A stretch of DNA of 64,000 bases from Auanema rhodensis (lineage: Eukaryota; Animalia; Nematoda), in NCBI GenBank assembly GCA_964057225.1, contig OZ059894.1, positions 11,408,001-11,472,000 of the forward strand, given 5' to 3'. Within the stretch, counting starts at the first letter, position 1. Each line of letters begins with the position of its first letter. This document shows, in pieces, positions 1,405 through 59,369 of the stretch. The position numbers were made by a program, and so were the translations under genes. The notes beneath the pieces are model-generated. The model saw only the letters and a list, made by a program, of their open reading frames with translations, was not told where the DNA came from and ran no database searches.

Positions 1405-1720
1405 ACCAGTATAGTAATAGAACACATATTGAAGATTAATTCGATAAGAACAATTTATTGACGTAGAGAATGTTTGTTCCGAAAAACTACAATATTAAAC
1501 TATAAAAGTAACAAAAGCGTAGAGGCAGCAAAGACATGAATAAACATAAATGTAAATACAGAATTACCAGGTAGTACATAAGTATGACAAAAAATTATAA
1601 GAAAGCCATGAAAATAGAAGGTTTGTGAACAAATGAGAGGTACATCTTTGATCGTATAGTCATTTCTAAACCGTTCGTATGCTGCAGCATCGTCATAAGC
1701 GTCACTCAAGTTGAATTTCC
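1405..1720 (-). mobile_element. Degenerate relic of element B tandem junction (B 3' end + U2 nt 39-78 + B 5' start); present in 17 units
   Basis: 1416-1455 matches U2 nt 39-78 at 36/40; 1456-1499 matches 63137-63180 at 38/44; ACCAGTATAG (1405-1414) is identical to 63915-63924; patchier similarity extends to ~1720. Confidence 0.8.
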
Positions 1721-15490: not shown

Positions 15491-16670
15491 ACAGTAAAAA
15501 GTCCAATCAAGAGAGAAATTTTTTCAACACATAGTTGTTTTTTTTTTAAATATCATTGTTTTTCCTCATAACTCGGTTTAAACTCGTTCTAACCCGTTGA
15601 AATACGTCTAGAAAGTCTTTATAACATGCATATGTATGATAGAACTTCATATTTATTGTAATAGAAAATTTTATTTTCAGACGTCTTGGTTAACAATGAT
15701 ATGTTTTACCCCCTTATAATTTTTATCATAATGTTCCTTATACGGAACGCTCAATGAAACTTGCTTCCAGAAAAATTTCTTTCTATTTTTTCTTCATATG
15801 TACGTAGATACTATAGAGAACTATGATAGAAAACTTTAACATTCACGAAATCATCATTTCTCATTACGCTACGGAGGTTTAAAAAGCTGTGTTTTACCTT
15901 ATAATAGACCGGAAAACCCTTGTGTTAAAACTGGACCGTTTTTACACATATAAAAATGTCCCGTATTCGGGACCCTAATGTAACTTTTGATTCCCTATAT
16001 TTTTTTTCATGAAATTTACAATCTACTGTAGAAAGAAGAATTATTTTTATAAAAACTGTAAATTTTTGAAAAATGAAAACAAAACGAAAACAAAAACAAC
16101 TTTTTTTTGAACATTTTCTCACACAAGGGTCCCCCCTTACCTACTTTTTTTCTCATTACTCGTTTCAACCTCATCCGATCACTCTGCAAACATGTTTAAT
16201 CGTTCTAACTTGTTGAAATACGTCTTAAAAGTCTAAACAACATGCATATGCATAATAGAAACCACCCGAATAGGCCCCCACGCACTAAACGAGATATATA
16301 CATTACCAGTATAGTAATAGAACACATATTGAAGATTAATTCGATAAGAACAATTTATTGACGTAGAGAATGTTTGTTCCGAAAAACTACAATATTAAAC
16401 TATAAAAGTAACAAAAGCGTAGAGGCAGCAAAGACATGAATAAACATAAATGTAAATACAGAATTACCAGGTAGTACATAAGTATGACAAAAAATTATAA
16501 GAAAGCCATGAAAATAGAAGGTTTGTGAACAAATGAGAGGTACATCTTTGATCGTATAGTCATTTCTAAACCGTTCGTATGCTGCAGCATCGTCATAAGC
16601 GTCACTCAAGTTGAATTTCCATGTGTACTACACGATTTTCATTCTTATTGTTACATTCTTTCCCTGAGGG

Positions 16671-16819
16671 AATGGGCCGTTCCCGCCAGCAGTGCAAGAG
16701 CGGGTCGACCCGTGAGGTGGAGCTAGCAAGCCAGCATCTACCTCAAGTCTCAAAAATCGGTTAACCTTATTGTGAACCAATGGAACACATATCGAAGGTT
16801 AATTCGATAAGAACGATTA
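16671..16819 (-). pseudogene. U2: U2 snRNA nt 38-186, 3' part of interrupted gene
   Basis: U2 match ends at ...GAACGATTA, then element 3' end ATGGTTTATTG. Confidence 0.93.
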
Positions 16820-18648
16820 ATGGTTTATTGAATAACTAATGTTATGATACAATAAATAACCAATAAAAAAGAGCCCAGAATCGGGGAGACGGTATTACCA
16901 GTACAACTTAAAACAGCAAGTAATTAAAAAGTACATAATAAGACACATTGCCAACAGAGGCTAAAACGACTCAAGAGTCGGGGGAGTGGGTTAAAAAAAA
17001 TGAACAAAAAAATGAATATTAAAGCAGAACAATGAGAAATCAAGTGCCGCTATGATCAAACAATTTGAGTGCCTACGGCAATGATGTTAAAAATAAACAA
17101 CAAAATACATGTACCAATGAAGGTCAGAAAGAAAGAAACAAAAGACAAAAATAAGTAATACAAAAAGTAAATACATTACAATCAAATCACAAACAAGTCA
17201 ATTGATAATTTCTTCTTCATATTGCCTTACACCAGAAACATGTTCCACGTAGATATTCCTGGCCCACTTGATGGTATCGGCGACGACGAGCTTCTCCATT
17301 AGCCGGTTGTAGTGGCTGCTGATCTTGAGTGATCGGAGGGCTTGTCCGTTGAGCGGGTCCATAGTTCCAAGCATTCCTACGACATATGCTTCTACACTAG
17401 TCTTATAACCAAGACATTGGTATTGGCTGGCTATGTCAGCATATTTCCTCTCCTTTATCATACGCGCGGCTATCATGGCTTGACGGCGGTTTTCATAGCT
17501 CACTGTAACATCAACGATACTACAGTGTTTTGCGTCATGATCGACCACTACTATGTCAGGTCGGAGTGTACTATTAATGCCAGGAAGAGGCTGGTTAGTG
17601 TAAACTTCTCCGTTTTTAGGCTCTGGCAGGGCTTTGATAAGACGGTCCACGATGTTGTTGTGGCGGAGTTGGATTGCTCTCGTGTGAGAGTGGCAGTGTC
17701 CAAGAACATGTGCAGCAGTTTCGTTGGAGTAACTACACCTGCGGCACTGTTTGTTTCCTTCTCCGTGTCTTCTACAGCCATTGAGCTGGAGAGTATTGAG
17801 TCGAGCCTTGTGGATGAATCGCCAATCAGCAAACCGTATGAAATCTCCCTTCGCCATAAAGTGATTGGACGCTTTGTTGAGCATTGTGACATCAAAGACT
17901 TTCCCTTGATCCGGTTTTTGAAGAAGGATCCGAAGGTCTTTCAGCCATAATGCACGTCGCAGGCTTCTGTGGCATAGTGAAGGTGTTAACAGTTGGTTGT
18001 TTAGATTGAGTTCTAAACCACTTTCGAGGCATGTCCAGTTAGCGTTGATGAGTTTCTTGAGTTGACGCATCGCTACTCTTACTCTAGTCCAGATGGAGGA
18101 AACATCAGATGTTTCGGTGTCGAAAATGCCATCAACGGAACCGTTGTAATATGCAGCTGTCTCATCGTTACTGGCTTGACGTTTAATCCTTTTTGATGCT
18201 ACTTTTTTTTGAGTCTTGATGCGCAATATCAGCTACTACAAGATCAGATGACTTCAAAAGTTGGTAGGCATGAGTGACTTCACAGACGTCTGACAGGTGT
18301 TGGAGTCGAGAGAGACCAAGTCCGCCGTAGTTAGTTGGCAGGTAGATTGGTTCAGCACTGGCGTTTGGAGGATAGTGCATCCATCTACGGGCACAGCGTT
18401 TGAGTTCTTTGTCAAAGGCGACTAGTTTACTCTTTGGGACGTGGCCATTCGTCATATGAAAATTAAGGCAGGGCATCAGGAAGGTGCGTACTGCGTCACC
18501 ATTGTGGTCTGAGTAGGATCGCGGAATAGGAGCGCAGATTGAACAAGAAAAAGGGCTCTGAAGAGGCACCTTTAGCTTGTAAAGCCCTTGCTCCATCTCT
18601 AGCAGATCTAAAGACTTACGTAGTACAGTTGCAATATCGATTTAGCCA
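16820..18648 (-). mobile_element. Utopia-like U2-targeting RLE non-LTR retrotransposon, copy 1 (1881-bp internal deletion)
   Basis: Both ends identical to full-length copies; deletion junction ...GCGTCA|CCATTG at 18498. Confidence 0.93.
17198..18596 (-). pseudogene. Deleted retrotransposon ORF: partial ZnF fused to post-RT linker, CCHC and RLE; +1 frameshift in T-run at ~18203-18210
   Basis: ORFs 18183-18596 (SDHNG|DAVRTF) and 17198-18226. Confidence 0.88.
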
Positions 18649-18744
18649 TTAACCTTATTGTGAACCAATGGAACACATATCGAAGGTTAATTCGATAAGA
18701 ACGATTACTACACTTTGATCTTAGCCAAAAGGCCGAGAAGCGAT
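18649..18744 (-). pseudogene. U2: U2 snRNA nt 1-96 fused to element 5' end
   Basis: ATCGC...AATAAGGTTAA then TGGCTAAATCG (element). Confidence 0.93.
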
Positions 18745-20257: not shown

Positions 20258-23200
20258 ATCGGGGAGACGGTATTACCAGTACAACTTAAAACAGCAAGTA
20301 ATTAAAAAGTACATAATAAGACACATTGCCAACAGAGGCTAAAACGACTCAAGAGTCGGGGGAGTGGGTTAAAAAAAATGAACAAAAAAATGAATATTAA
20401 AGCAGAACAATGAGAAATCAAGTGCCGCTATGATCAAACAATTTGAGTGCCTACGGCAATGATGTTAAAAATAAACAACAAAATACATGTACCAATGAAG
20501 GTCAGAAAGAAAGAAACAAAAGACAAAAATAAGTAATACAAAAAGTAAATACATTACAATCAAATCACAAACAAGTCAATTGATAATTTCTTCTTCATAT
20601 TGCCTTACACCAGAAACATGTTCCACGTAGATATTCCTGGCCCACTTGATGGTATCGGCGACGACGAGCTTCTCCATTAGCCGGTTGTAGTGGCTGCTGA
20701 TCTTGAGTGATCGGAGGGCTTGTCCGTTGAGCGGGTCCATAGTTCCAAGCATTCCTACGACATATGCTTCTACACTAGTCTTATAACCAAGACATTGGTA
20801 TTGGCTGGCTATGTCAGCATATTTCCTCTCCTTTATCATACGCGCGGCTATCATGGCTTGACGGCGGTTTTCATAGCTCACTGTAACATCAACGATACTA
20901 CAGTGTTTTGCGTCATGATCGACCACTACTATGTCAGGTCGGAGTGTACTATTAATGCCAGGAAGAGGCTGGTTAGTGTAAACTTCTCCGTTTTTAGGCT
21001 CTGGCAGGGCTTTGATAAGACGGTCCACGATGTTGTTGTGGCGGAGTTGGATTGCTCTCGTGTGAGAGTGGCAGTGTCCAAGAACATGTGCAGCAGTTTC
21101 GTTGGAGTAACTACACCTGCGGCACTGTTTGTTTCCTTCTCCGTGTCTTCTACAGCCATTGAGCTGGAGAGTATTGAGTCGAGCCTTGTGGATGAATCGC
21201 CAATCAGCAAACCGTATGAAATCTCCCTTCGCCATAAAGTGATTGGACGCTTTGTTGAGCATTGTGACATCAAAGACTTTCCCTTGATCCGGTTTTTGAA
21301 GAAGGATCCGAAGGTCTTTCAGCCATAATGCACGTCGCAGGCTTCTGTGGCATAGTGAAGGTGTTAACAGTTGGTTGTTTAGATTGAGTTCTAAACCACT
21401 TTCGAGGCATGTCCAGTTAGCGTTGATGAGTTTCTTGAGTTGACGCATCGCTACTCTTACTCTAGTCCAGATGGAGGAAACATCAGATGTTTCGGTGTCG
21501 AAAATGCCATCAACGGAACCGTTGTAATATGCAGCTGTCTCATCGTTACTGGCTTGACGTTTAATCCTTTTTGATGCTACTTTTTTTGAGTCTTGATGCG
21601 CAATATCAGCTACTACAAGATCAGATGACTTCAAAAGTTGGTAGGCATGAGTGACTTCACAGACGTCTGACAGGTGTTGGAGTCGAGAGAGACCAAGTCC
21701 GCCGTAGTTAGTTGGCAGGTAGATTGGTTCAGCACTGGCGTTTGGAGGATAGTGCATCCATCTACGGGCACAGCGTTTGAGTTCTTTGTCAAAGGCGACT
21801 AGTTTACTCTTTGGGACGTGGCCATTCGTCATATGAAAATTAAGGCAGGGCATCAGGAAGGTGCGTACTGCGTCAGCTTTCTGCCATTCAGCAAGTAAGG
21901 ATTTGTCAATTTTTTCCAAGTGTTGACTCATAATATTCACTGTTGGAACCGCAGACTTATGTAAATGCATTCCAGTAGGGATTCCCAGGTGGGAGTAGCT
22001 GTCGAATTTGCTGAGAGCGGGTAGAGAGGAGCTCTGTAGCATGTATGAGGCTGTTGATATTTTCCCTTTGTCGATCGTCAAGGTGGCGCATTTCGCTGGT
22101 TTGAAGGTCAAGCCTGTGAAATTAGCCGCATTTGATGCTGCGTCCAACATTTTCTGTAGATCTTCTGATGATGAGGAGACCAGGGCAAGGTCATCGGCGT
22201 ACGCTAGCACAGCGATGTTGTGGTTGTGTAGCTTATAGCCAGTAGAGGATTCCAAGATGGTTTTAATTAGAGGTTCAATGGCAAGGTTGAACAGGATCGG
22301 AGATAGTGGGGATCCTTGTAACACACCTGCATGAACTGGAATGGTCGATGTGAGTCCGGAGCCTGTCTGGATTCTTGTAGAGGCATCTGTGTATAGAGCT
22401 CGTACTCGGGATATTGAGGCTTCAGCCACTCCTGACCATCTTAGAACGTCTAGCAGAGTTTCGTGTGGCAGCGATCCAAAAGCGTTTGCGAGATCAAGCC
22501 AAGCAATTGCAATTTTCTCACGTTTACGTTTAGCGTCCGCAATGGTACTTTGCAACATAAAGTTGTGTTCCATGCATCCAGCTTTGGCCACAAAGCCCTT
22601 TTGGGAGGGAGAAAGTCTTTTTTCTGCTCTTGCCCATGTTAGCAGTCGATGCGTAAGACAAGCTGAGTACGTCTTACCAATTGTGCACGAAAGTGCTATT
22701 GGTCGCCAGTTGTTAATGTCAGCTTTATCACCTTTCTTATGGATGAGGACGGTGGTCGACTCTTTCCAGGAAAAAGGGATGTGTCCTAGCTTGTGTACGG
22801 TGTTAAATATCGCTGCTAATATGTGACCTCCTTGGTCAAATTTCTTCCAGTGCGAGTATCGAAGTCCATCAGCTCCTGGAGCCGTATCGCTGCAACGTCG
22901 TATGCGTTCCCAGACTTCCAAAGGGGTGAAAACACCTTCTAATGGGTCGGTACTAGCTGGCAAATCCGGTCTGGTGACTGTGATGGGGAGGGCTGGGCCT
23001 TGACTGCTGTGAACAGAAAGGAAATGTTTTTCAACCTCTGCAGATGGTATGGTGCAGGTTTCACTTTGTTCTCCGAGCAGTTGTCGAAAGGCTTTCTTCT
23101 TGTTGGCCCTCCAGAGCTTCTGGAGCTTCATCGCCTGGGTTTTTTGGTCTTCCTCAGGTTGTGTGTGTGGTCGGCGCCTTTGTCGGAAGTTGGGAACTTT

Positions 23201-23907
23201 GATCATAATGTCAAGAGACTTTCTGATTGCGTCTACCAACTCTTCCAGGACCTGCTCGAGCTCACTTTTGCACACAACCTTTTTAATTCTATCCACCCAA
23301 GTATTTTCAGAGTTTCTATTCGGATCAGGGTCGGCAAAAAATGGTTCTGTACTCGAAACCCTGATCTCGTTGAATATTTCACTCTCTCGCGGAAGGGGGG
23401 AAACTTCGGCCTCTGGGGACAAGTCCAGAATTGGGGCCTCAAACAAGCGTACCGTTGATGGAGATCCTTGTTCCTGTCCACTGGATGATGTTTCCTCCAT
23501 TGTACGCTCCTCCACGGGCGGGGTGGTCGTCCTTGTGCCTGGTGGCCGGGTGTTCCTGATCCTCCGCAATATAGGGCGGGAACTGGGCTCTCTCGGAGAT
23601 AGAGGTGAGATCACCACAGTTTCCTCTATGATGCGGAGGCATCCTTCAGCTTTTTTTCTGATGGCTTTTAACGGCCTTCAGATTGCTGGTGAGGCCACAG
23701 GCACGGCACTCAAATTCTACTCCGACCTCATGTTCTCTCCGAAGATGGCGGACGAGACCATTGTGGTCTGAGTAGGATCGCGGAATAGGAGCGCAGATTG
23801 AACAAGAAAAAGGGCTCTGAAGAGGCACCTTTAGCTTGTAAAGCCCTTGCTCCATCTCTAGCAGATCTAAAGACTTACGTAGTACAGTTGCAATATCGAT
23901 TTAGCCA
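20258..23907 (-). mobile_element. Utopia-like retrotransposon, copy 2 (last 60 bp lost with flanking U2 3' part and spacer)
   Basis: Spacer ...GGTTTAAAA joined via TCATCATC to ATCGGGGAGAC inside the 3' UTR. Confidence 0.93.
20576..23855 (-). pseudogene. ZnF-RT-RLE polyprotein with +1 frameshift in T-run at ~23651-23657
   Basis: ORFs 23646-23855 and 20576-23617; run is 7 T versus 6 T in intact copies (may be a homopolymer error). Confidence 0.85.
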
Positions 23908-24003
23908 TTAACCTTATTGTGAACCAATGGAACACATATCGAAGGTTAATTCGATAAGAACGATTACTACACTTTGATCTTAGCCAAAAGGCCGAGAAGC
24001 GAT
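23908..24003 (-). pseudogene. U2: U2 snRNA nt 1-96 fused to element 5' end
   Basis: Same junction as 18649. Confidence 0.93.
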
Positions 24004-29760: not shown

Positions 29761-30940
29761 ACAGTAAAAAGTCCAATCAAGAGAGAAATTTTTTCAACAC
29801 ATAGTTGTTTTTTTTTTAAATATCATTGTTTTTCCTCATAACTCGGTTTAAACTCGTTCTAACCCGTTGAAATACGTCTAGAAAGTCTTTATAACATGCA
29901 TATGTATGATAGAACTTCATATTTATTGTAATAGAAAATTTTATTTTCAGACGTCTTGGTTAACAATGATATGTTTTACCCCCTTATAATTTTTATCATA
30001 ATGTTCCTTATACGGAACGCTCAATGAAACTTGCTTCCAGAAAAATTTCTTTCTATTTTTTCTTCATATGTACGTAGATACTATAGAGAACTATGATAGA
30101 AAACTTTAACATTCACGAAATCATCATTTCTCATTACGCTACGGAGGTTTAAAAAGCTGTGTTTTACCTTATAATAGACCGGAAAACCCTTGTGTTAAAA
30201 CTGGACCGTTTTTACACATATAAAAATGTCCCGTATTCGGGACCCTAATGTAACTTTTGATTCCCTATATTTTTTTTCATGAAATTTACAATCTACTGTA
30301 GAAAGAAGAATTATTTTTATAAAAACTGTAAATTTTTGAAAAATGAAAACAAAACGAAAACAAAAACAACTTTTTTTTGAACATTTTCTCACACAAGGGT
30401 CCCCCCTTACCTACTTTTTTTCTCATTACTCGTTTCAACCTCATCCGATCACTCTGCAAACATGTTTAATCGTTCTAACTTGTTGAAATACGTCTTAAAA
30501 GTCTAAACAACATGCATATGCATAATAGAAACCACCCGAATAGGCCCCCACGCACTAAACGAGATATATACATTACCAGTATAGTAATAGAACACATATT
30601 GAAGATTAATTCGATAAGAACAATTTATTGACGTAGAGAATGTTTGTTCCGAAAAACTACAATATTAAACTATAAAAGTAACAAAAGCGTAGAGGCAGCA
30701 AAGACATGAATAAACATAAATGTAAATACAGAATTACCAGGTAGTACATAAGTATGACAAAAAATTATAAGAAAGCCATGAAAATAGAAGGTTTGTGAAC
30801 AAATGAGAGGTACATCTTTGATCGTATAGTCATTTCTAAACCGTTCGTATGCTGCAGCATCGTCATAAGCGTCACTCAAGTTGAATTTCCATGTGTACTA
30901 CACGATTTTCATTCTTATTGTTACATTCTTTCCCTGAGGG

Positions 30941-31089
30941 AATGGGCCGTTCCCGCCAGCAGTGCAAGAGCGGGTCGACCCGTGAGGTGGAGCTAGCAAG
31001 CCAGCATCTACCTCAAGTCTCAAAAATCGGTTAACCTTATTGTGAACCAATGGAACACATATCGAAGGTTAATTCGATAAGAACGATTA
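30941..31089 (-). pseudogene. U2: U2 snRNA nt 38-186, 3' part of interrupted gene
   Basis: Same junction as 16819. Confidence 0.93.
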
Positions 31090-34000
31090 ATGGTTTATTG
31101 AATAACTAATGTTATGATACAATAAATAACCAATAAAAAAGAGCCCAGAATCGGGGAGACGGTATTACCAGTACAACTTAAAACAGCAAGTAATTAAAAA
31201 GTACATAATAAGACACATTGCCAACAGAGGCTAAAACGACTCAAGAGTCGGGGGAGTGGGTTAAAAAAAATGAACAAAAAAATGAATATTAAAGCAGAAC
31301 AATGAGAAATCAAGTGCCGCTATGATCAAACAATTTGAGTGCCTACGGCAATGATGTTAAAAATAAACAACAAAATACATGTACCAATGAAGGTCAGAAA
31401 GAAAGAAACAAAAGACAAAAATAAGTAATACAAAAAGTAAATACATTACAATCAAATCACAAACAAGTCAATTGATAATTTCTTCTTCATATTGCCTTAC
31501 ACCAGAAACATGTTCCACGTAGATATTCCTGGCCCACTTGATGGTATCGGCGACGACGAGCTTCTCCATTAGCCGGTTGTAGTGGCTGCTGATCTTGAGT
31601 GATCGGAGGGTCCATAGTTCCAAGCATTCCTACGACATATGCTTCTACACTAGTCTTATAACCAAGACATTGGTATTGGCTGGCTATGTCAGCATATTTC
31701 CTCTCCTTTATCATACGCGCGGCTATCATGGCTTGACGGCGGTTTTCATAGCTCACTGTAACATCAACGATACTACAGTGTTTTGCGTCATGATCGACCA
31801 CTACTATGTCAGGTCGGAGTGTACTATTAATGCCAGGAAGAGGCTGGTTAGTGTAAACTTCTCCGTTTTTAGGCTCTGGCAGGGCTTTGATAAGACGGTC
31901 CACGATGTTGTTGTGGCGGAGTTGGATTGCTCTCGTGTGAGAGTGGCAGTGTCCAAGAACATGTGCAGCAGTTTCGTTGGAGTAACTACACCTGCGGCAC
32001 TGTTTGTTTCCTTCTCCGTGTCTTCTACAGCCATTGAGCTGGAGAGTATTGAGTCGAGCCTTGTGGATGAATCGCCAATCAGCAAACCGTATGAAATCTC
32101 CCTTCGCCATAAAGTGATTGGACGCTTTGTTGAGCATTGTGACATCAAAGACTTTCCCTTGATCCGGTTTTTGAAGAAGGATCCGAAGGTCTTTCAGCCA
32201 TAATGCACGTCGCAGGCTTCTGTGGCATAGTGAAGGTGTTAACAGTTGGTTGTTTAGATTGAGTTCTAAACCACTTTCGAGGCATGTCCAGTTAGCGTTG
32301 ATGAGTTTCTTGAGTTGACGCATCGCTACTCTTACTCTAGTCCAGATGGAGGAAACATCAGATGTTTCGGTGTCGAAAATGCCATCAACGGAACCGTTGT
32401 AATATGCAGCTGTCTCATCGTTACTGGCTTGACGTTTAATCCTTTTTGATGCTACTTTTTTTGAGTCTTGATGCGCAATATCAGCTACTACAAGATCAGA
32501 TGACTTCAAAAGTTGGTAGGCATGAGTGACTTCACAGACGTCTGACAGGTGTTGGAGTCGAGAGAGACCAAGTCCGCCGTAGTTAGTTGGCAGGTAGATT
32601 GGTTCAGCACTGGCGTTTGGAGGATAGTGCATCCATCTACGGGCACAGCGTTTGAGTTCTTTGTCAAAGGCGACTAGTTTACTCTTTGGGACGTGGCCAT
32701 TCGTCATATGAAAATTAAGGCAGGGCATCAGGAAGGTGCGTACTGCGTCAGCTTTCTGCCATTCAGCAAGTAAGGATTTGTCAATTTTTTCCAAGTGTTG
32801 ACTCATAATATTCACTGTTGGAACCGCAGACTTATGTAAATGCATTCCAGTAGGGATTCCCAGGTGGGAGTAGCTGTCGAATTTGCTGAGAGCGGGTAGA
32901 GAGGAGCTCTGTAGCATGTATGAGGCTGTTGATATTTTCCCTTTGTCGATCGTCAAGGTGGCGCATTTCGCTGGTTTGAAGGTCAAGCCTGTGAAATTAG
33001 CCGCATTTGATGCTGCGTCCAACATTTTCTGTAGATCTTCTGATGATGAGGAGACCAGGGCAAGGTCATCGGCGTACGCTAGCACAGCGATGTTGTGGTT
33101 GTGTAGCTTATAGCCAGTAGAGGATTCCAAGATGGTTTTAATTAGAGGTTCAATGGCAAGGTTGAACAGGATCGGAGATAGTGGGGATCCTTGTAACACA
33201 CCTGCATGAACTGGAATGGTCGATGTGAGTCCGGAGCCTGTCTGGATTCTTGTAGAGGCATCTGTGTATAGAGCTCGTACTCGGGATATTGAGGCTTCAG
33301 CCACTCCTGACCATCTTAGAACGTCTAGCAGAGTTTCGTGTGGCAGCGATCCAAAAGCGTTTGCGAGATCAAGCCAAGCAATTGCAATTTTCTCACGTTT
33401 ACGTTTAGCGTCCGCAATGGTACTTTGCAACATAAAGTTGTGTTCCATGCATCCAGCTTTGGCCACAAAGCCCTTTTGGGAGGGAGAAAGTCTTTTTTCT
33501 GCTCTTGCCCATGTTAGCAGTCGATGCGTAAGACAAGCTGAGTACGTCTTACCAATTGTGCACGAAAGTGCTATTGGTCGCCAGTTGTTAATGTCAGCTT
33601 TATCACCTTTCTTATGGATGAGGACGGTGGTCGACTCTTTCCAGGAAAAAGGGATGTGTCCTAGCTTGTGTACGGTGTTAAATATCGCTGCTAATATGTG
33701 ACCTCCTTGGTCAAATTTCTTCCAGTGCGAGTATCGAAGTCCATCAGCTCCTGGAGCCGTATCGCTGCAACGTCGTATGCGTTCCCAGACTTCCAAAGGG
33801 GTGAAAACACCTTCTAATGGGTCGGTACTAGCTGGCAAATCCGGTCTGGTGACTGTGATGGGGAGGGCTGGGCCTTGACTGCTGTGAACAGAAAGGAAAT
33901 GTTTTTCAACCTCTGCAGATGGTATGGTGCAGGTTTCACTTTGTTCTCCGAGCAGTTGTCGAAAGGCTTTCTTCTTGTTGGCCCTCCAGAGCTTCTGGAG

Positions 34001-34781
34001 CTTCATCGCCTGGGTTTTTTGGTCTTCCTCAGGTTGTGTGTGTGGTCGGCGCCTTTGTCGGAAGTTGGGAACTTTGATCATAATGTCAAGAGACTTTCTG
34101 ATTGCGTCTACCAACTCTTCCAGGACCTGCTCGAGCTCACTTTTGCACACAACCTTTTTAATTCTATCCACCCAAGTATTTTCAGAGTTTCTATTCGGAT
34201 CAGGGTCGGCAAAAAATGGTTCTGTACTCGAAACCCTGATCTCGTTGAATATTTCACTCTCTCGCGGAAGGGGGGAAACTTCGGCCTCTGGGGACAAGTC
34301 CAGAATTGGGGCCTCAAACAAGCGTACCGTTGATGGAGATCCTTGTTCCTGTCCACTGGATGATGTTTCCTCCATTGTACGCTCCTCCACGGGCGGGGTG
34401 GTCGTCCTTGTGCCTGGTGGGCGGGTGTTCCTGATCCTCCGCAATATAGGGCGGGAACTGGGCTCTCTCGGAGATAGAGGTGAGATCACCACAGTTTCCT
34501 CTATGATGCGGAGGCATCCTTCAGCTTTTTTCTGATGGCTTTTAACGGCCTTCAGATTGCTGGTGAGGCCACAGGCACGGCACTCAAATTCTACTCCGAC
34601 CTCATGTTCTCTCCGAAGATGGCGGACGAGACCATTGTGGTCTGAGTAGGATCGCGGAATAGGAGCGCAGATTGAACAAGAAAAAGGGCTCTGAAGAGGC
34701 ACCTTTAGCTTGTAAAGCCCTTGCTCCATCTCTAGCAGATCTAAAGACTTACGTAGTACAGTTGCAATATCGATTTAGCCA
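31090..34781 (-). mobile_element. Utopia-like retrotransposon, copy 3 (17-bp deletion near ORF end)
   Basis: Full ends; GGAGGG|TCCATAG at 31610 lacks CTTGTCCGTTGAGCGGG. Confidence 0.94.
31487..34729 (-). CDS. ZnF-RT-RLE polyprotein, 1080 aa, C-terminus frameshifted after GTMDP
   Basis: Matches the 1092-aa protein up to GTMDP, then an unrelated tail. Confidence 0.8.
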   Translation of the reverse strand: MEQGLYKLKVPLQSPFSCSICAPIPRSYSDHNGLVRHLRREHEVGVEFECRACGLTSNLKAVKSHQKKAEGCLRIIEETVVISPLSPREPSSRPILRRIRNTRPPGTRTTTPPVEERTMEETSSSGQEQGSPSTVRLFEAPILDLSPEAEVSPLPRESEIFNEIRVSSTEPFFADPDPNRNSENTWVDRIKKVVCKSELEQVLEELVDAIRKSLDIMIKVPNFRQRRRPHTQPEEDQKTQAMKLQKLWRANKKKAFRQLLGEQSETCTIPSAEVEKHFLSVHSSQGPALPITVTRPDLPASTDPLEGVFTPLEVWERIRRCSDTAPGADGLRYSHWKKFDQGGHILAAIFNTVHKLGHIPFSWKESTTVLIHKKGDKADINNWRPIALSCTIGKTYSACLTHRLLTWARAEKRLSPSQKGFVAKAGCMEHNFMLQSTIADAKRKREKIAIAWLDLANAFGSLPHETLLDVLRWSGVAEASISRVRALYTDASTRIQTGSGLTSTIPVHAGVLQGSPLSPILFNLAIEPLIKTILESSTGYKLHNHNIAVLAYADDLALVSSSSEDLQKMLDAASNAANFTGLTFKPAKCATLTIDKGKISTASYMLQSSSLPALSKFDSYSHLGIPTGMHLHKSAVPTVNIMSQHLEKIDKSLLAEWQKADAVRTFLMPCLNFHMTNGHVPKSKLVAFDKELKRCARRWMHYPPNASAEPIYLPTNYGGLGLSRLQHLSDVCEVTHAYQLLKSSDLVVADIAHQDSKKVASKRIKRQASNDETAAYYNGSVDGIFDTETSDVSSIWTRVRVAMRQLKKLINANWTCLESGLELNLNNQLLTPSLCHRSLRRALWLKDLRILLQKPDQGKVFDVTMLNKASNHFMAKGDFIRFADWRFIHKARLNTLQLNGCRRHGEGNKQCRRCSYSNETAAHVLGHCHSHTRAIQLRHNNIVDRLIKALPEPKNGEVYTNQPLPGINSTLRPDIVVVDHDAKHCSIVDVTVSYENRRQAMIAARMIKERKYADIASQYQCLGYKTSVEAYVVGMLGTMDPPITQDQQPLQPANGEARRRRYHQVGQEYLRGTCFWCKAI

Positions 34782-34877
34782 TTAACCTTATTGTGAACCA
34801 ATGGAACACATATCGAAGGTTAATTCGATAAGAACGATTACTACACTTTGATCTTAGCCAAAAGGCCGAGAAGCGAT
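34782..34877 (-). pseudogene. U2: U2 snRNA nt 1-96 fused to element 5' end
   Basis: Same junction as 18649. Confidence 0.93.
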
Positions 34878-35641: not shown

Positions 35642-36821
35642 ACAGTAAAAAGTCCAATCAAGAGAGAAATTTTTTCAACACATAGTTGTTTTTTTTTTAA
35701 ATATCATTGTTTTTCCTCATAACTCGGTTTAAACTCGTTCTAACCCGTTGAAATACGTCTAGAAAGTCTTTATAACATGCATATGTATGATAGAACTTCA
35801 TATTTATTGTAATAGAAAATTTTATTTTCAGACGTCTTGGTTAACAATGATATGTTTTACCCCCTTATAATTTTTATCATAATGTTCCTTATACGGAACG
35901 CTCAATGAAACTTGCTTCCAGAAAAATTTCTTTCTATTTTTTCTTCATATGTACGTAGATACTATAGAGAACTATGATAGAAAACTTTAACATTCACGAA
36001 ATCATCATTTCTCATTACGCTACGGAGGTTTAAAAAGCTGTGTTTTACCTTATAATAGACCGGAAAACCCTTGTGTTAAAACTGGACCGTTTTTACACAT
36101 ATAAAAATGTCCCGTATTCGGGACCCTAATGTAACTTTTGATTCCCTATATTTTTTTTCATGAAATTTACAATCTACTGTAGAAAGAAGAATTATTTTTA
36201 TAAAAACTGTAAATTTTTGAAAAATGAAAACAAAACGAAAACAAAAACAACTTTTTTTTGAACATTTTCTCACACAAGGGTCCCCCCTTACCTACTTTTT
36301 TTCTCATTACTCGTTTCAACCTCATCCGATCACTCTGCAAACATGTTTAATCGTTCTAACTTGTTGAAATACGTCTTAAAAGTCTAAACAACATGCATAT
36401 GCATAATAGAAACCACCCGAATAGGCCCCCACGCACTAAACGAGATATATACATTACCAGTATAGTAATAGAACACATATTGAAGATTAATTCGATAAGA
36501 ACAATTTATTGACGTAGAGAATGTTTGTTCCGAAAAACTACAATATTAAACTATAAAAGTAACAAAAGCGTAGAGGCAGCAAAGACATGAATAAACATAA
36601 ATGTAAATACAGAATTACCAGGTAGTACATAAGTATGACAAAAAATTATAAGAAAGCCATGAAAATAGAAGGTTTGTGAACAAATGAGAGGTACATCTTT
36701 GATCGTATAGTCATTTCTAAACCGTTCGTATGCTGCAGCATCGTCATAAGCGTCACTCAAGTTGAATTTCCATGTGTACTACACGATTTTCATTCTTATT
36801 GTTACATTCTTTCCCTGAGGG

Positions 36822-36970
36822 AATGGGCCGTTCCCGCCAGCAGTGCAAGAGCGGGTCGACCCGTGAGGTGGAGCTAGCAAGCCAGCATCTACCTCAAGTC
36901 TCAAAAATCGGTTAACCTTATTGTGAACCAATGGAACACATATCGAAGGTTAATTCGATAAGAACGATTA
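36822..36970 (-). pseudogene. U2: U2 snRNA nt 38-186, 3' part of interrupted gene
   Basis: Same junction as 16819. Confidence 0.93.
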
Positions 36971-39900
36971 ATGGTTTATTGGATAACTAATGTTATGAAA
37001 CAATAAATAACCAATAAAAAAGAGCCCAGAATCGGGGAGACGGTATTACCAGTACAACTTAAAACAACAAGTGATTAAAAAGTACAAAATAAAACACATT
37101 ACCAACAGAGGCTAAAACGACTCAAGAGTCGGGGGAGTGGGTTAAAAAAAGTAATGAATAACAAAAAAAATGAATAATAAAGCAGAACAGTGAAAAGTAA
37201 ATATCAAGTGCCGCTATGATCAAACAATTTGAGTGCCTACGGCAATGGTGTTAAAAATAAACAACAAAATACATGTACCAATGAAGGTCAGAAAGAGAGA
37301 AAGAAAAAAGACAAAAATAAGTAATACAAAAAGTAAAAAATATATTACAATCAAATCACAAACAAGTCAATGGATAATTTCTTCTTCATACTGCCTTACA
37401 CCAGAAACATGTTCCACGTAGATATTCCTGGCCCACTTGATGGTATCGGCGACGACGAGCTTCTCCATTAGCCGGTTGTAGTGGCTGCTGATCTTGAGTG
37501 ATCGGAGGGCTTGTACGTTGAGCGGGTCCATAGTTCCAAGCATTCCTACAACATACGCTTCTACACTAGTCTTATAACCAAGACATTGGTATTGGCTGGC
37601 TATGTCAGCATATTTCCTCTCCTTTATCATACGCGCGGCTATCATGGCTTGTCGGCGGTTTTCATAGCTCACTGTAACATCAACGATACTACAGTGTTTT
37701 GCGTCATGATCGACCACTACTATGTCAGGTCGGAGTGTACTATTAATGCCAGGAAGAGGCTGGTTAGTGTAAACTTCTCCGTTTTTAGGCTCTGGCAGGG
37801 CTTTGATAAGACGGTCCACGATGTTGTTGTGGCGGAGTTGGATTGCTCTCGTGTGAAAGTGGCAGTGTCCAAGAACATGTGCAGCAGTTTCGTTGGGGTA
37901 ACTACACCTGCGGCACTGTTTGTTTCCTTCTCCGTGTCTTCTACAGCCATTGAGCTGGAGAGTATTAAGTCGAGCCTTGTGGATGAATCGCCAATCAGCA
38001 AACCGTATGAAATCTCCCTTCGCCATAAAGTGATTGGACGCTTTGTTGAGCATTGTGACATCAAAGACTTTCCCTTGATCCGGTTTTTGAAGAAGGATCC
38101 GAAGGTCTTTCAGCCATAATGCACGTCGCAGGCTTCTGTGGCATAGTGAAGGTGTTAACAGTTGGTTGTTTAGATTGAGTTCTAAACCACTTTCGAGGCA
38201 TGTCCAGTTAGCGTTGATGAGTTTCTTGAGTTGACGCATCGCTACTCTTACTCTAGTCCAGATGGAGGAAACATCAGATGTTTCGGTGTCGAAAATGCCA
38301 TCAACGGAACCGTTGTAATATGCAGCTGTCTCATCGTTACTGGCTTGACGTTTAATCCTTTTTGATGCTACTTTTATTGAGTCTTGATGCGCAATATCAG
38401 CTACTACAAGATCAGATGACTTCAAAAGTTGGTAGGCATGAGTGACTTCACAGACGTCTGACAGGTGTTGGAGTCGAGAGAGACCAAGTCCGCCGTAGTT
38501 AGTTGGCAGGTAGATTGGTTCAGCACTGGCGTTTGGAGGATAGTGCATCCATCTACGGGCACAGCGTTTGAGTTCTTTGTCAAAGGCGACTAGTTTACTC
38601 TTTGGGACGTGGCCATTCGTCATATGAAAATTAAGGCAGGGCATCAGGAAGGTGCGTACTGCGTCAGCTTTCTGCCATTCAGCCAGTAAGGATTTGTCAA
38701 TTTTTTCCAAGTGTTGACTCATGATATTCACTGTTGGAACCGCAGACTTATGTAAATGCATTCCAGTAGGGATTCCCAGGTGGGAGTAGCTGTCAAATTT
38801 GCTGAGAGCGGGTAGAAAGCAGCTCTGAAGCATGTATGAGGCTGTTGATATTTTCCCTTTGTCGATCGTCAAAGTGGCGCATTTCGCTGGTTTGAAGGTC
38901 AAGCCTGTGAAATTAGCCGCATTTGATGCTGCGTCCAACATTTTCTGTAGATCTTCTGATGATGAGGAGACCAGGGCAAGGTCATCGGCGTACGCTAGCA
39001 CAGCGATGTTGTGATTGTGTAGCTTATAGCCTGTAGAGGTTTCCAAGATGGTTTTAATTAGAGGTTCAATGGCAAGGTTGAACAGGATCGGAGATAGTGG
39101 GGATCCTTGTAACACACCTGCGTGAACTGGAATGGTCGAAGTGAGTCCGGAGCCTGTCTGGATTCTTGTAGAGGCATCTGTGTATAGAGCTCGTACTCGG
39201 GATATTGAGGCTTCAGCCATTCCTGACCATCTTAGAACGTCTAGCAGAGTTTCGTGTGGCAGCGATCCAAAAGCGTTTGCGAGATCAAGCCAAGCAATTG
39301 CAATTTTCTCACGTTTACGTTTAGCGTCTGCAATGGTACTTTGCAACAAAAAGTTGTGTTCCATGCATCCAGCTTTGGCCACAAAGCCCTTTTGGGAGGG
39401 AGAAAGTCTTTTTTCTGCTCTTGCCCATGTTAGCAGTCGATGCGTAAGACAAGCTGAGTACGTCTTACCAATTGTGCACGAAAGTGCTATTGGTCGCCAG
39501 TTGTTAATGTCAGCTTTATCACCTTTCTTATGGATGAGGACGGTGGTCGACTCTTTCCAGGAAAAAGGGATGTGTCCTAGCTTGTGTACGGTGTTAAATA
39601 TCGCTGCTAATATGTGACCTCCTTGGTCAAATTTCTTCCAGTGCGAGTATCGAAGTCCATCAGCTCCTGGAGCCGTATCGCTGCAACGTCGTATGCGTTC
39701 CCAGACTTCCAAAGGGGTGAAAACACCTTCTAATGGGTCGGTACTAGTTGGCAAATCCGGTCTGGTGACTGTGATGGGGAGGGCTGGGCCTTGACTGCTG
39801 TGAACAGAAAGGAAGTGTTTTTCAACATCTGCAGATGGTATGGTGCAGGTTTCACTTTGTTCTCCGAGCAGTTGTCGAAAGGCTTTCTTCTTGTTGGCCC

Positions 39901-40697
39901 TCCAAAGCTTCTGGATCTTCATCGCCTGGGTTTTTTGGTCTTCCTCAGGTTGTGTGTGTGGTCGGCGCCTTTGTCGGAAGTTGGGAACTTTGATCATAAT
40001 GTCAAGAGACTTTCTGATTGTGTCTACCAACTCTTCCAGGACCTGCTCGAGCTCACTTTTGCACACTACCTTTTTAATTCTATCCACCCAAATATTTTCA
40101 GAGTTTCTATTCGGATCAGGGTCGGCAAAAGATGGTTCTGTACTCGGAACCCTGATCTCGTTGAATATTTCACTCTCTCGCGGAAGGGGGGAAACTTCGG
40201 CCTCTGGGGACAAGTCCAGAATTGGGGCCTCAAACAAGCGTACCGTTGATGGAGATCCTTGTTCCTGTCCACTGGATGATGTTTCCTCCATTGTACGCTC
40301 CTCCACGGGCGGGGTGGTCGTCCTTGTGCCTGGTGGGCGGGTGTTCCTGATCCTCCGCAATATAGGGCGGGAACTGGGCTCTCTCGGAGATAGAGGTGAG
40401 ATCACCACAGTTTCCTCTATGATGCGGAGGCATCCTTCAGCTTTTTTCTGATGGCTTTTAACGGCCTTCAGATTGCTGGTGAGGCCACAGGCACGGCACT
40501 CAAATTCTACTCCGACCTCATGTTCTCTCCGAAGATGGCGGACGAGACCATTGTGGTCTGAGTAGGATCGCGGAATAGGAGCGCAGATTGAACAAGAAAA
40601 AGGGCTCTGAAGAGGCACCTTTAGCTTGTAAAGCCCTTGCTCCATCTCTAGCAGATCTAAAGACTTACGTAGTACAGTTGCAATATCGATTTAGCCA
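36971..40697 (-). mobile_element. Utopia-like retrotransposon, copy 4 (full length, variant subfamily)
   Basis: Intact ORF; 3' UTR has indels and substitutions versus other copies. Confidence 0.95.
37367..40645 (-). CDS. Non-LTR retrotransposon polyprotein, 1092 aa (2 ZnF, RT, CCHC, RLE)
   Basis: CSIC..HLRREH; CRAC..H..C; APGADG, WRPIAL, LDLANAFGS, QGSPLSP, YADD; CRRC..HVLGHC, RHN, RPDIV, KERKY. Confidence 0.96.
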   Translation of the reverse strand: MEQGLYKLKVPLQSPFSCSICAPIPRSYSDHNGLVRHLRREHEVGVEFECRACGLTSNLKAVKSHQKKAEGCLRIIEETVVISPLSPREPSSRPILRRIRNTRPPGTRTTTPPVEERTMEETSSSGQEQGSPSTVRLFEAPILDLSPEAEVSPLPRESEIFNEIRVPSTEPSFADPDPNRNSENIWVDRIKKVVCKSELEQVLEELVDTIRKSLDIMIKVPNFRQRRRPHTQPEEDQKTQAMKIQKLWRANKKKAFRQLLGEQSETCTIPSADVEKHFLSVHSSQGPALPITVTRPDLPTSTDPLEGVFTPLEVWERIRRCSDTAPGADGLRYSHWKKFDQGGHILAAIFNTVHKLGHIPFSWKESTTVLIHKKGDKADINNWRPIALSCTIGKTYSACLTHRLLTWARAEKRLSPSQKGFVAKAGCMEHNFLLQSTIADAKRKREKIAIAWLDLANAFGSLPHETLLDVLRWSGMAEASISRVRALYTDASTRIQTGSGLTSTIPVHAGVLQGSPLSPILFNLAIEPLIKTILETSTGYKLHNHNIAVLAYADDLALVSSSSEDLQKMLDAASNAANFTGLTFKPAKCATLTIDKGKISTASYMLQSCFLPALSKFDSYSHLGIPTGMHLHKSAVPTVNIMSQHLEKIDKSLLAEWQKADAVRTFLMPCLNFHMTNGHVPKSKLVAFDKELKRCARRWMHYPPNASAEPIYLPTNYGGLGLSRLQHLSDVCEVTHAYQLLKSSDLVVADIAHQDSIKVASKRIKRQASNDETAAYYNGSVDGIFDTETSDVSSIWTRVRVAMRQLKKLINANWTCLESGLELNLNNQLLTPSLCHRSLRRALWLKDLRILLQKPDQGKVFDVTMLNKASNHFMAKGDFIRFADWRFIHKARLNTLQLNGCRRHGEGNKQCRRCSYPNETAAHVLGHCHFHTRAIQLRHNNIVDRLIKALPEPKNGEVYTNQPLPGINSTLRPDIVVVDHDAKHCSIVDVTVSYENRRQAMIAARMIKERKYADIASQYQCLGYKTSVEAYVVGMLGTMDPLNVQALRSLKISSHYNRLMEKLVVADTIKWARNIYVEHVSGVRQYEEEIIH

Positions 40698-40793
40698 TTA
40701 ACCTTATTGTGAACCAATGGAACACATATCGAAGGTTAATTCGATAAGAACGATTACTACACTTTGATCTTAGCCAAAAGGCCGAGAAGCGAT
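40698..40793 (-). pseudogene. U2: U2 snRNA nt 1-96 fused to element 5' end
   Basis: Same junction as 18649. Confidence 0.93.
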
Positions 40794-51796: not shown

Positions 51797-52976
51797 ACAG
51801 TAAAAAGTCCAATCAAGAGAGAAATTTTTTCAACACATAGTTTTTTTTTTTTTAAATATCATTGTTTTTCCTCATAACTCGGTTTAAACTCGTTCTAACC
51901 CGTTGAAATACGTCTAGAAAGTCTTTATAACATGCATATGTATGATAGAACTTCATATTTATTGTAATAGAAAATTTTATTTTCAGACGTCTTGGTTAAC
52001 AATGATATGTTTTACCCCCTTATAATTTTTATCATAATGTTCCTTATACGGAACGCTCAATGAAACTTGCTTCCAGAAAAATTTCTTTCTATTTTTTCTT
52101 CATATGTACGTAGATACTATAGAGAACTATGATAGAAAACTTTAACATTCACGAAATCATCATTTCTCATTACGCTACGGAGGTTTAAAAAGCTGTGTTT
52201 TACCTTATAATAGACCGGAAAACCCTTGTGTTAAAACTGGACCGTTTTTACACATATAAAAATGTCCCGTATTCGGGACCCTAATGTAACTTTTGATTCC
52301 CTATATTTTTTTTCATGAAATTTACAATCTACTGTAGAAAGAAGAATTATTTTTATAAAAACTGTAAATTTTTGAAAAATGAAAACAAAACGAAAACAAA
52401 AACAACTTTTTTTTGAACATTTTCTCACACAAGGGTCCCCCCTTACCTACTTTTTTTCTCATTACTCGTTTCAACCTCATCCGATCACTCTGCAAACATG
52501 TTTAATCGTTCTAACTTGTTGAAATACGTCTTAAAAGTCTAAACAACATGCATATGCATAATAGAAACCACCCGAATAGGCCCCCACGCACTAAACGAGA
52601 TATATACATTACCAGTATAGTAATAGAACACATATTGAAGATTAATTCGATAAGAACAATTTATTGACGTAGAGAATGTTTGTTCCGAAAAACTACAATA
52701 TTAAACTATAAAAGTAACAAAAGCGTAGAGGCAGCAAAGACATGAATAAACATAAATGTAAATACAGAATTACCAGGTAGTACATAAGTATGACAAAAAA
52801 TTATAAGAAAGCCATGAAAATAGAAGGTTTGTGAACAAATGAGAGGTACATCTTTGATCGTATAGTCATTTCTAAACCGTTCGTATGCTGCAGCATCGTC
52901 ATAAGCGTCACTCAAGTTGAATTTCCATGTGTACTACACGATTTTCATTCTTATTGTTACATTCTTTCCCTGAGGG

Positions 52977-53125
52977 AATGGGCCGTTCCCGCCAGCAGTG
53001 CAAGAGCGGGTCGACCCGTGAGGTGGAGCTAGCAAGCCAGCATCTACCTCAAGTCTCAAAAATCGGTTAACCTTATTGTGAACCAATGGAACACATATCG
53101 AAGGTTAATTCGATAAGAACGATTA
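52977..53125 (-). pseudogene. U2: U2 snRNA nt 38-186, 3' part of interrupted gene
   Basis: Same junction as 16819. Confidence 0.93.
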
Positions 53126-56835: not shown

Positions 56836-56931
56836 TTAACCTTATTGTGAACCAATGGAACACATATCGAAGGTTAATTCGATAAGAACGATTACTACAC
56901 TTTGATCTTAGCCAAAAGGCCGAGAAGCGAT
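56836..56931 (-). pseudogene. U2: U2 snRNA nt 1-96 fused to element 5' end
   Basis: Same junction as 18649. Confidence 0.93.
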
Positions 56932-59220: not shown

Positions 59221-59369
59221 AATGGGCCGTTCCCGCCAGCAGTGCAAGAGCGGGTCGACCCGTGAGGTGGAGCTAGCAAGCCAGCATCTACCTCAAGTCT
59301 CAAAAATCGGTTAACCTTATTGTGAACCAATGGAACACATATCGAAGGTTAATTCGATAAGAACGATTA
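59221..59369 (-). pseudogene. U2: U2 snRNA nt 38-186, 3' part of interrupted gene
   Basis: Same junction as 16819. Confidence 0.93.

What the first reader, a model, noticed from the sequence alone, without database searches (positions are those of the whole stretch)
18649..18744. Element carries a U2 leader that rebuilds its own target site (57-59-bp pseudo-TSD)
Seen: in all six copies, including both subfamilies, the upstream U2 does not stop at the insertion site but runs to nt 96, so nt ~38-96 lies on both sides. This is much longer than usual for RLE-element target duplications. Element B shows the same design with another fixed endpoint (nt 79), also kept in the old relic. Inference: the U2 segment is part of the element RNA, transcribed from the host U2 promoter and joined at the 5' end by homology, which would explain the lack of 5' truncation. 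Each insertion thus recreates a complete landing site, letting later insertions stack without destroying more U2 genes. Stacking is visible at 63136 and in the spacer relic. I cannot check whether this was already reported for Utopia.
Basis: partly seen in the sequence, partly recalled or inferred. Interest (0 to 1): 0.85.

Follow-up and report, generated by a model that had tools for sequence, protein, structure and literature searches.

The report
U2-headed Utopia retrotransposon with inherited pseudo-TSD
A jumping gene that lives inside this roundworm's U2 snRNA genes seems to carry the first 96 bases of U2 on its own RNA, so the 59-base repeat flanking it is inherited with the element, not made at each landing, and it rebuilds the landing site.

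Summary
The window is a U2/5S tandem array. All six copies of a 3.7-kb Utopia-type (RT plus restriction-like endonuclease) retrotransposon, element A, are preceded by U2 ending at nt 96 and followed by U2 from nt 38. Genome-wide, 47 of 47 A 5' ends have this junction.

- The six 5'-truncated A copies I could read lack the nt 38-96 repeat; their upstream U2 stops at nt 38, 20 or 2, or is deleted.
- Across the array, U2 nt 96 is followed only by U2 nt 97 or A nt 1.
- Two full-length copies have a leader starting at U2 nt 1-3 fused to foreign DNA, as expected for cDNA ending at the U2 transcription start.
- Sublineages 1.4% apart sit in identical host flanks, so this is not one amplified insertion.

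No RNA data could be obtained, so co-transcription stays inferred.

It is a new variant of known strategies (R2 upstream-homology priming, SLACS host-promoter use). The scan reached a similar reading earlier on other DNA of this genome.

The parts
18649..18744 (-). U2 snRNA nt 1-96 'leader' in front of an A copy (the finding's coordinates)
   Evidence: blastn 100% to U2 nt 1-96; Rfam U2
16820..18648 (-). Element A copy with an internal deletion (A nt ~151 joined to ~2025)
16667..16819 (-). U2 nt 38-190 downstream of that copy
56836..56931 (-). U2 nt 1-96 leader of a full-length A copy
53126..56835 (-). Full-length element A (3710 bp; frame interrupted near 54834)
52973..53125 (-). U2 nt 38-190 downstream of that copy
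40698..40793 (-). U2 nt 1-96 leader
36971..40697 (-). Full-length element A. Its uninterrupted 1092-aa frame (37367-40645) has an N-terminal C2H2 finger, an RT domain, a CCHC knuckle and a PD..D..K endonuclease.
36818..36970 (-). U2 nt 38-190
34782..34877 (-). U2 nt 1-96 leader
31090..34781 (-). Full-length element A (sublineage alpha)
30937..31089 (-). U2 nt 38-190
23908..24003 (-). U2 nt 1-96 leader
20258..23907 (-). Element A copy that lost its last ~77 nt, the downstream U2 and part of the spacer by a later deletion
63079..63136 (-). U2 nt 39-96: remainder of an A leader after element B landed in it (a stack joint)
59370..63078 (-). Full-length element A (uninterrupted 1092-aa frame 59748-63026)
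59217..59369 (-). U2 nt 38-190
63137..63924 (-). Element B: 788 bp, non-coding, 3' end like that of family C
63925..64000 (-). U2 nt 4-79 (cut by the window edge): B's leader, ending at nt 79
1416..1672 (-). Spacer relic, present in every unit. It consists of an old C-like 3' end (~217 nt, 77%), a U2 nt 39-79-like stretch (90%), and a B-like 5' start next to it.

Best explanation
Element A is a U2-specific Utopia-type RLE non-LTR retrotransposon.

Proposed mechanism:
- It has no 5' end of its own. Its template RNA starts at the +1 of the interrupted host U2 gene and so begins with U2 nt 1-96.
- Target-primed reverse transcription starts at a bottom-strand nick at U2 nt 37/38.
- A full-length cDNA ends with the complement of U2 nt 96-1. 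Its last 37 nt pair with the upstream half of the cut target. The target's 3' end at about nt 37 primes second-strand synthesis and copies nt 38-96 from the cDNA.
- The 59-bp 'duplication' is therefore inherited through the RNA and is not produced by a 59-bp staggered cut.
- Truncated cDNAs lack the homology and are joined by end-joining, giving no duplication or a deletion.
- Each full-length insertion leaves a promoter-bearing U2 nt 1-96 that contains the whole nick site, so later insertions can land there and stacks form.
- B and B' (endpoint nt 79) and family C (nt 89) follow the same design, each with its own heritable endpoint.

Shown: the junction statistics, the truncated-copy junctions, the ectopic 5' joints and the stacks.
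Inferred: U2-promoter transcription, annealing-primed second-strand synthesis, and the position of the top-strand cut.
For: 1. The nt96|A1 junction is invariant. There are 47 exact copies genome-wide and none with another preceding base.

2. 5'-truncated A copies never carry the repeat.
- L005:7135: U2 nt 1-38, then GTA, then A from nt 2308.
- L003:1183: U2 nt 1-20, then A from nt 1726.
- L017:886: U2 nt 1-2, then A from nt 3550.
- L011:4904: joined through an 8-nt GTGTAGTA microhomology.
- L009:3778 and L010:2635: joined to spacer.
- Genome-wide, U2 nt 79-96 is followed only by U2 nt 97-99 or A nt 1-3. The three exceptions are on contig C8, outside the array. Yet 28 of 62 exact 3' junctions lack a full-length partner.
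- Counting five independent truncation events, Fisher's test of 47/47 against 0/5 gives p = 4e-7.

3. Two truncated copies are sequence-identical over the aligned part to a full-length leader-bearing copy (0 mismatches). The same enzyme lineage therefore gives both outcomes.

4. Two full-length copies have leaders that begin at U2 nt 1-3 fused to non-canonical DNA.
- L020:4156: the promoter flank is cut at about -32. This copy also has a unique 3' junction, so it is an independent event.
- L030: fused to the 3' end of the spacer relic through a 2-nt AT overlap. This junction is unique in the genome.

5. In stacks, the U2 piece before each element always ends at that element's own endpoint, whatever lies upstream.

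6. B and B' differ by about 15% and share nt 79 (12 B' copies, at least 35 B copies). The old relic keeps nt 79 next to a B-like start.

7. No ribozyme family was found that could remove a leader.

8. Precedents exist. R2 shows uniform 5' junctions when upstream 28S stays on the RNA (PMC3774820). SLACS transcription starts at +1 of the interrupted SL RNA gene (PMC3447711).
Against: - There is no RNA evidence.
- There is no SNP in U2 nt 38-96 anywhere in the sampled array. Donor and target origin of the repeat therefore cannot be told apart directly.
- All stack architectures can also be derived under a TSD model if downstream U2 pieces are allowed as targets.
- For the L030 case, the predicted downstream joint (A 3' end next to relic U2) was not found, so that event is not fully reconstructed.
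- In R2-like mechanisms, top-strand cleavage may depend on completion of cDNA synthesis. Truncated copies alone therefore do not exclude a TSD that is made only in full-length events.
Confidence: 0.72

Rival explanations
1. True target-site duplication. The element's endonuclease nicks the bottom strand at nt 37/38 and the top strand at nt 96/97, but only when the complex has completed a full-length cDNA. Truncated events are resolved by host repair at or upstream of nt 38.
For: - Kojima & Jurka read Utopia flanking repeats as TSDs with family-specific top-strand cut sites: 0 bp in arthropods, 20 bp in reptiles (PMC4640811).
- Family-specific endpoints (96, 89, 79) could reflect different proteins.
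- All stacks are derivable under this model.
Against: - The truncated copies read directly (five independent events), and no orphan 3' end anywhere in the array by the pattern searches, show an upstream endpoint between nt 39 and 96.
- Identical-sequence copies give both outcomes.
- Two leaders start at U2 nt 1-3 on foreign DNA.
- The non-coding B/B' lineage keeps nt 79, while the only autonomous element with a similar 3' end (family C) has nt 89.
- If the element is transcribed from the U2 promoter and has no ribozyme, its RNA would contain nt 1-96 anyway.
Confidence: 0.12
2. The element's own 5' end is a captured U2 nt 38-96 fragment. The RNA starts at or near nt 38 from an internal promoter, insertion is precise with no TSD, and the upstream nt 1-37 always comes from the target.
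For: - In stacks the leader piece always starts at nt 38/39, or nt 34.
- An element 3' end directly followed by U2 nt 1 occurs only once in the genome.
Against: - The L030 and L020:4156 copies have U2 starting at nt 1-3 joined to non-U2 DNA or to a resected promoter flank. Under this model both need unrelated deletions that happen to end at the transcription start.
- Stacks are equally explained by insertion into a complete promoter-proximal leader.
Confidence: 0.1
3. All full-length copies descend from one founder insertion with an odd junction. That insertion was spread through the array by unequal crossing-over or segmental duplication, so junction identity is by descent only.
For: Array dynamics clearly amplify occupied units. 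B-bearing units recur with a ~3.3-kb period at C1:11.94-11.98 Mb, and two truncated copies are duplicates.
Against: - Full-length sublineages differ by up to 55 mismatches in 3.7 kb. In contrast, 1 kb of host flank is identical or differs at 0-4 sites between units hundreds of kb apart.
- Spacing of the copies is irregular.
- There are independent 5' and 3' junction variants.
- Several independent truncated insertions from the same lineages show ongoing retrotransposition.
Confidence: 0.06

Closest known systems
Utopia (U2 snRNA gene-specific RLE non-LTR retrotransposons; Kojima & Jurka 2015, PMC4640811)
   Same: - Domain layout is the same: N-terminal zinc finger, RT, CCHC knuckle and a PD..D..K endonuclease, with no Myb domain.
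- The 3' junction lies at U2 nt 38/39.
- Tandem and stacked insertions in U2 arrays occur.
- 5' boundaries are family-specific.
   Different: - The paper reads flanking repeats (0 or 20 bp) as TSDs from variable top-strand cuts. It does not discuss promoters or co-transcription.
- Here the repeat is 59 bp (41 and 51 bp in sister families). It is strictly linked to full-length copies, absent from truncated ones, and best read as RNA-borne.
R2 elements whose ribozyme cleaves upstream in 28S (Eickbush, Burke & Eickbush 2013, PMC3774820)
   Same: - The element is co-transcribed with the host gene.
- Host sequence is retained on the RNA 5' end.
- Full-length 5' junctions are uniform through annealing of the cDNA to the target, and junctions are variable otherwise.
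   Different: - No HDV-like ribozyme was detected. The RNA 5' end would be set by the host Pol II snRNA start site.
- The retained host segment runs 59 nt past the insertion site. It therefore produces a duplication and a new target, which R2 does not.
SLACS/CRE elements in trypanosomatid spliced-leader RNA genes
   Same: - They are RLE elements sitting in a small-RNA gene.
- Transcription is reported to start at +1 of the interrupted host gene (PMC3447711).
- Their TSDs vary in size (PMC12278014). From memory, 49 bp for SLACS.
   Different: - It is a different clade, with a different host gene and poly(A) tails.
- I found no report that their long TSD is an inherited leader. The present data suggest that this is worth re-examining.

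Membership tests
Utopia (RLE non-LTR retrotransposon) | Reverse transcriptase domain | tested here: met
   Pfam RVT_1, E = 5e-28, residues 371-593 of the 1092-aa frame
Utopia (RLE non-LTR retrotransposon) | C-terminal CCHC zinc knuckle followed by a PD..D/E..K restriction-like endonuclease; N-terminal zinc finger | tested here: met
   Found by motif inspection, not by a profile: CCHC at residue 911; RPD..(D)..IVDVTV..KERKY downstream; C2H2-like finger at residue 18.
Utopia (RLE non-LTR retrotransposon) | Insertion in U2 snRNA genes, with the 3' flank starting at U2 nt 38/39 | tested here: met
   All 3' junctions read in the window and loci. 62 exact 3' junctions genome-wide, all in the U2/5S array.
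Utopia (RLE non-LTR retrotransposon) | No Myb domain (the criterion used to separate Utopia from R2 in PMC13188248) | tested here: met
   No Myb family hit in the Pfam scan
Utopia (RLE non-LTR retrotransposon) | RT phylogeny groups it with named Utopia references | not tested
   No named Utopia reference sequences were available. The nearest proteins (38-56% identity) are unnamed. Those whose loci I read, from the scorpion Centruroides and from a Logan contig, are also flanked by U2 fragments.
R2-type co-transcription with upstream-homology priming | Uniform 5' junction in full-length copies, variable junctions in 5'-truncated copies | tested here: met
   47 of 47 against variable endpoints at nt 38, 20, 2 or deleted
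R2-type co-transcription with upstream-homology priming | Element RNA made as a co-transcript of the host gene | not testable with these tools
The only indirect support is the two leaders that start at U2 nt 1-3 on foreign DNA.
R2-type co-transcription with upstream-homology priming | 5' self-cleaving HDV-like ribozyme | tested here: not met
   Rfam at gathering thresholds finds only U2 and 5S in the window

The most novel reading that the evidence does not exclude
The U2 leader is a selected module, not a fossil.
- It stops just before the Sm site (nt 100-106; endpoints at 79, 89 and 96 all lie upstream), so the RNA is not packaged as an snRNP.
- It pairs with an anti-U2 tract in the 5' UTR.
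- It acts as a self-renewing landing pad, so the family accumulates in stacks at a fixed cost in U2 genes.

By extension, the 'TSDs' used to infer top-strand cut sites in Utopia (20 bp in reptiles and in the scorpion here), and perhaps in SLACS, would be inherited leaders and not cleavage footprints.
Probability: 0.3. Interest if true: 0.75.

Novelty: new variant of a known kind. Interest (0 to 1): 0.6.

Why it matters
- Flanking repeats are routinely used to infer where site-specific retrotransposons cut the second strand. Here natural copies show that a long, invariant 'TSD' can be carried on the element's RNA. This changes how such junctions should be read in Utopia and possibly in the SLACS/CRE elements.
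- It gives a concrete, testable case of a retrotransposon using a Pol II snRNA promoter and host-gene homology to complete integration.
- The element rebuilds its own target, which explains stacking and limits damage to an essential multicopy gene.
- Site-specific RLE elements are being developed for transgene insertion, so a natural 5'-homology design is of practical interest.

Tried and rejected
- **Whole-array fetch.** About 19 orphan 3' ends and the downstream end of the L030 stack could not be read. I used exact pattern counts instead.
- **RNA evidence.** Only three ~20-Mb 'RNA?' contig runs, each holding 0.07 of the words or less. U2 folding was done only in the local script.
- **SNP test of donor versus target origin.** Not possible. 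U2 variants in the sample differ only at nt 115-175.
- **Stack order as a discriminator.** Every stack can be derived under both models, so I dropped it as decisive evidence.
- **Predicted joint 'A 3' end + relic U2'.** Not found.
- **Family C.** Only one copy with its nt 89 junction, so that endpoint rests on n = 1.
- **Flank haplotypes.** Host flanks are too uniform to type insertions.
- **Dispersed 55-bp U2 nt 40-79 repeats.** They do not extend to nt 34, and their context could not be read.

Full report
**What is there**

The window is G000:C1:11,408,001-11,472,000 of a 181-Mb genome that earlier scan notes call a roundworm. It is a minus-strand tandem array of ~2.48-kb units, each with one 190-nt U2 snRNA gene and two 5S rRNA genes. 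The array spans at least C1:10.93-12.22 Mb.

Six units are interrupted by element A (~3710 bp). Its uninterrupted 1092-aa frame has an N-terminal C2H2-like finger, an RT domain (Pfam RVT_1, E = 5e-28), a CCHC knuckle and a PD..D..K endonuclease, and no Myb domain. The 3' junction is at U2 nt 38/39, the Utopia site (PMC4640811).

The closest proteins are unnamed (38-56% identity). They come from metagenome and Logan contigs, other nematodes and the scorpion Centruroides.

**Checking the observation**

blastn of the U2 gene against the window shows U2 nt 1-96 at 100% identity in front of five A copies. In the sixth copy U2 nt 39-96 precedes A, because the 788-bp element B has landed in that leader. 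B itself is preceded by U2 ending at nt 79. U2 nt 38-190 follows five copies. The sixth copy lost its 3' end and the downstream U2 by a later deletion into the spacer.

The repeat is nt 38-96, 59 bp. Its boundary is ambiguous by 3 nt because A ends in TAA.

Genome-wide:
- An exact 37-mer across nt 83-96|A1-23 occurs 47 times, all in this array. No A start has another preceding base.
- Of the 40 junctions scored, 33 extend upstream to at least nt 27. The other seven start at nt 34 or 38 and are stacked.
- B has at least 35 junctions at nt 79. Its ~15%-diverged relative B' has 12 copies, also at nt 79.
- An autonomous family C (63-68% nucleotide identity to A; L005:1685-5622) is preceded by U2 ending at nt 89, in a single copy.
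- Every unit has a spacer relic: a C-like 3' end (77%), a U2 nt 39-79-like stretch (90%), then a B-like 5' start.

**TSD or RNA-borne leader**

*First test: truncated copies.* 5'-truncated copies exist and lack the repeat.
- L005:7135 has U2 nt 1-38, then GTA, then A from nt 2308.
- L003:1183 has U2 nt 1-20, then A from nt 1726.
- L017:886 has U2 nt 1-2, then A from nt 3550.
- L011:4904 is joined through an 8-nt GTGTAGTA microhomology in the U2 3' flank.
- L009:3778 and L010:2635 are duplicates and are joined to spacer.

Two of these copies show 0 mismatches to a full-length, leader-bearing copy over the aligned part. The same enzyme lineage therefore yields both outcomes.

Genome-wide, U2 nt 79-96 is followed only by U2 nt 97-99 or A nt 1-3. 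The three exceptions are on contig C8, outside the array. Meanwhile 28 of 62 exact A 3' junctions have no full-length partner. Three of those are internal deletions, and the rest are 5'-truncated or rearranged.

The nt 96 endpoint is therefore strictly tied to A nt 1.

*Second test: ectopic 5' joints.* Two full-length copies have ectopic 5' joints that start at the U2 transcription start.
- At L020:4156 the promoter flank is cut at about -32 and joined to U2 nt 3-96 plus A. This copy also has a unique 3' junction (ACCAT|CGTTC), so it is an independent event.
- In L030 the relic's 3' end is joined through a 2-nt AT overlap to U2 nt 1-96 plus A. This junction is unique in the genome.

These are what a cDNA ending at U2 +1 would give when upstream homology is missing.

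*Third test: one founder insertion or many.* The copies are not one insertion spread by recombination. Full-length sublineages differ by up to 55 mismatches in 3.7 kb. The 1 kb of host flank is identical or differs at 0-4 sites between units up to hundreds of kb apart. Spacing of the copies is irregular.

Array amplification does occur as well. B-bearing units repeat with a ~3.3-kb period at C1:11.94-11.98 Mb.

**Mechanism proposed**

- The RNA starts at U2 +1 and carries nt 1-96.
- TPRT starts at a nick at nt 37/38.
- The last 37 nt of a full-length cDNA pair with the upstream target half. That half primes second-strand synthesis and copies nt 38-96 from the cDNA.
- Truncated cDNAs are end-joined, with small deletions or filler nucleotides.

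This is the R2 'upstream 28S on the RNA' model (PMC3774820), with two differences. A host start site replaces the ribozyme; none was detected. The retained host segment extends 59 nt past the insertion site.

SLACS transcription from +1 of the interrupted SL RNA gene is a second precedent (PMC3447711).

The shown parts are the junction statistics, the truncated-copy junctions, the ectopic joints and the stacks. Transcription from the U2 promoter, annealing-primed second-strand synthesis and the position of the top-strand cut are inferred.

**Landing-site regeneration**

Stacks seen:
- a truncated A inside an A leader (L003/L002);
- B or B' in front of an A leader (window 63136; L033, L038);
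- A in front of B', which is in front of B (L015);
- four B' copies in a row, 906 bp apart (L033-L039).

In every stack the U2 piece before an element ends at that element's own endpoint. An element 3' end directly followed by U2 nt 1 occurs only once. This fits insertion into the complete, promoter-proximal leader. These architectures can, however, also be derived under a TSD model.

**Comparison outside this genome**

- In Centruroides (L022), a relative is preceded by U2 nt 1 to ~58. Its 3' end is followed by a 20-nt U2 piece (nt ~40-59) and then by the 5' region of the next element. This is a 20-nt version of the same stack.
- A Logan contig (L026) has U2 ending at about nt 36 with no repeat.
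- Kojima & Jurka report 0-bp and 20-bp 'TSDs' and do not mention promoters.

**Limits**

- No RNA data. One search found only three tiny runs.
- No SNP in nt 38-96, so donor and target origin cannot be told apart directly.
- The L030 event is not fully reconstructed.
- A TSD made only on completion of a full-length cDNA is not excluded (rival, ~0.12).

**Verdict**

It is a new variant of known strategies. The scan reached a similar reading earlier on other DNA of this genome (notes s1-387519, s1-407094). Interest 0.6.

Noticed in passing
G000 contigs C3-C8 and distal C1 (e.g. C3:7454427-7454557); not in the window: U2 nt 59-79 followed by an A occurs 157 times. Only 12 of these are B' copies in the array. 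The rest are dispersed, often as 55-bp tandem units made of U2 nt 40-79 plus a 15-nt spacer (AATTTTGTATTTCAT). The units start at the Utopia insertion site, end at the B-lineage endpoint nt 79, and do not extend back to nt 34. They look like a stack joint that has spread outside the U2 genes. Their context could not be read.
   Followed up: partly
window 40646-40697 (-), and the same stretch in every A copy: A's 52-nt 5' UTR contains TACTAC (branch-site-like, complementary to U2 GUAGUA) followed by GTAAGT (5' splice-site-like). Local folding pairs it with U2 nt ~16-40 of its own leader (duplex about -27 kcal/mol). Family C has ACTACGTAC at the same place.
   Followed up: partly
G000:C1:11941755-11980104: B-bearing U2 units repeat with a period of ~2.95-3.31 kb over about 40 kb. 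Occupied units are therefore amplified by unequal crossing-over as well as by transposition.
   Followed up: no
L033, L034, L038, L039 (C1:11633705-11637287): Four identical 864-bp B' elements in a row, each separated by U2 nt 39-79, ending on an A leader.
   Followed up: partly
L005:1685-5622 (-): A second autonomous Utopia family, C. It has a zinc-finger/RT frame and 63-68% nucleotide identity to A. Its 3' end resembles those of B and of the spacer relic. It is preceded by U2 ending at nt 89, and only one copy with this junction was found.
   Followed up: partly
L011:4865-5134 (-); window e.g. 52925-52972: The U2 3' flank carries a pseudo-target, GTGTAGTA, 33-40 nt after the gene. One truncated A copy is joined exactly there, with loss of a whole spacer.
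   Followed up: partly
window 20258 and 18498-18506: One A copy lost its last ~77 nt, the downstream U2 and ~760 nt of spacer. Another has an internal deletion (A nt ~151 joined to ~2025). Both keep the nt 96 leader.
   Followed up: yes
G000:C1:11223384-11302983: Five A 5' junctions and seven 3' junctions lie on the plus strand. Part of the array is therefore inverted.
   Followed up: no
G000:C8:5695105, 10318812, 10330261: Three places outside the array where U2 nt 79-96 is followed by variant bases. They may be dispersed U2 variants or pseudogenes.
   Followed up: no
L022:2589-2650 and 6860-6885: In the scorpion Centruroides sculpturatus, Utopia relatives are stacked with a 20-nt U2 joint. 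Both 5' regions share a GGGTAAGT motif.
   Followed up: partly
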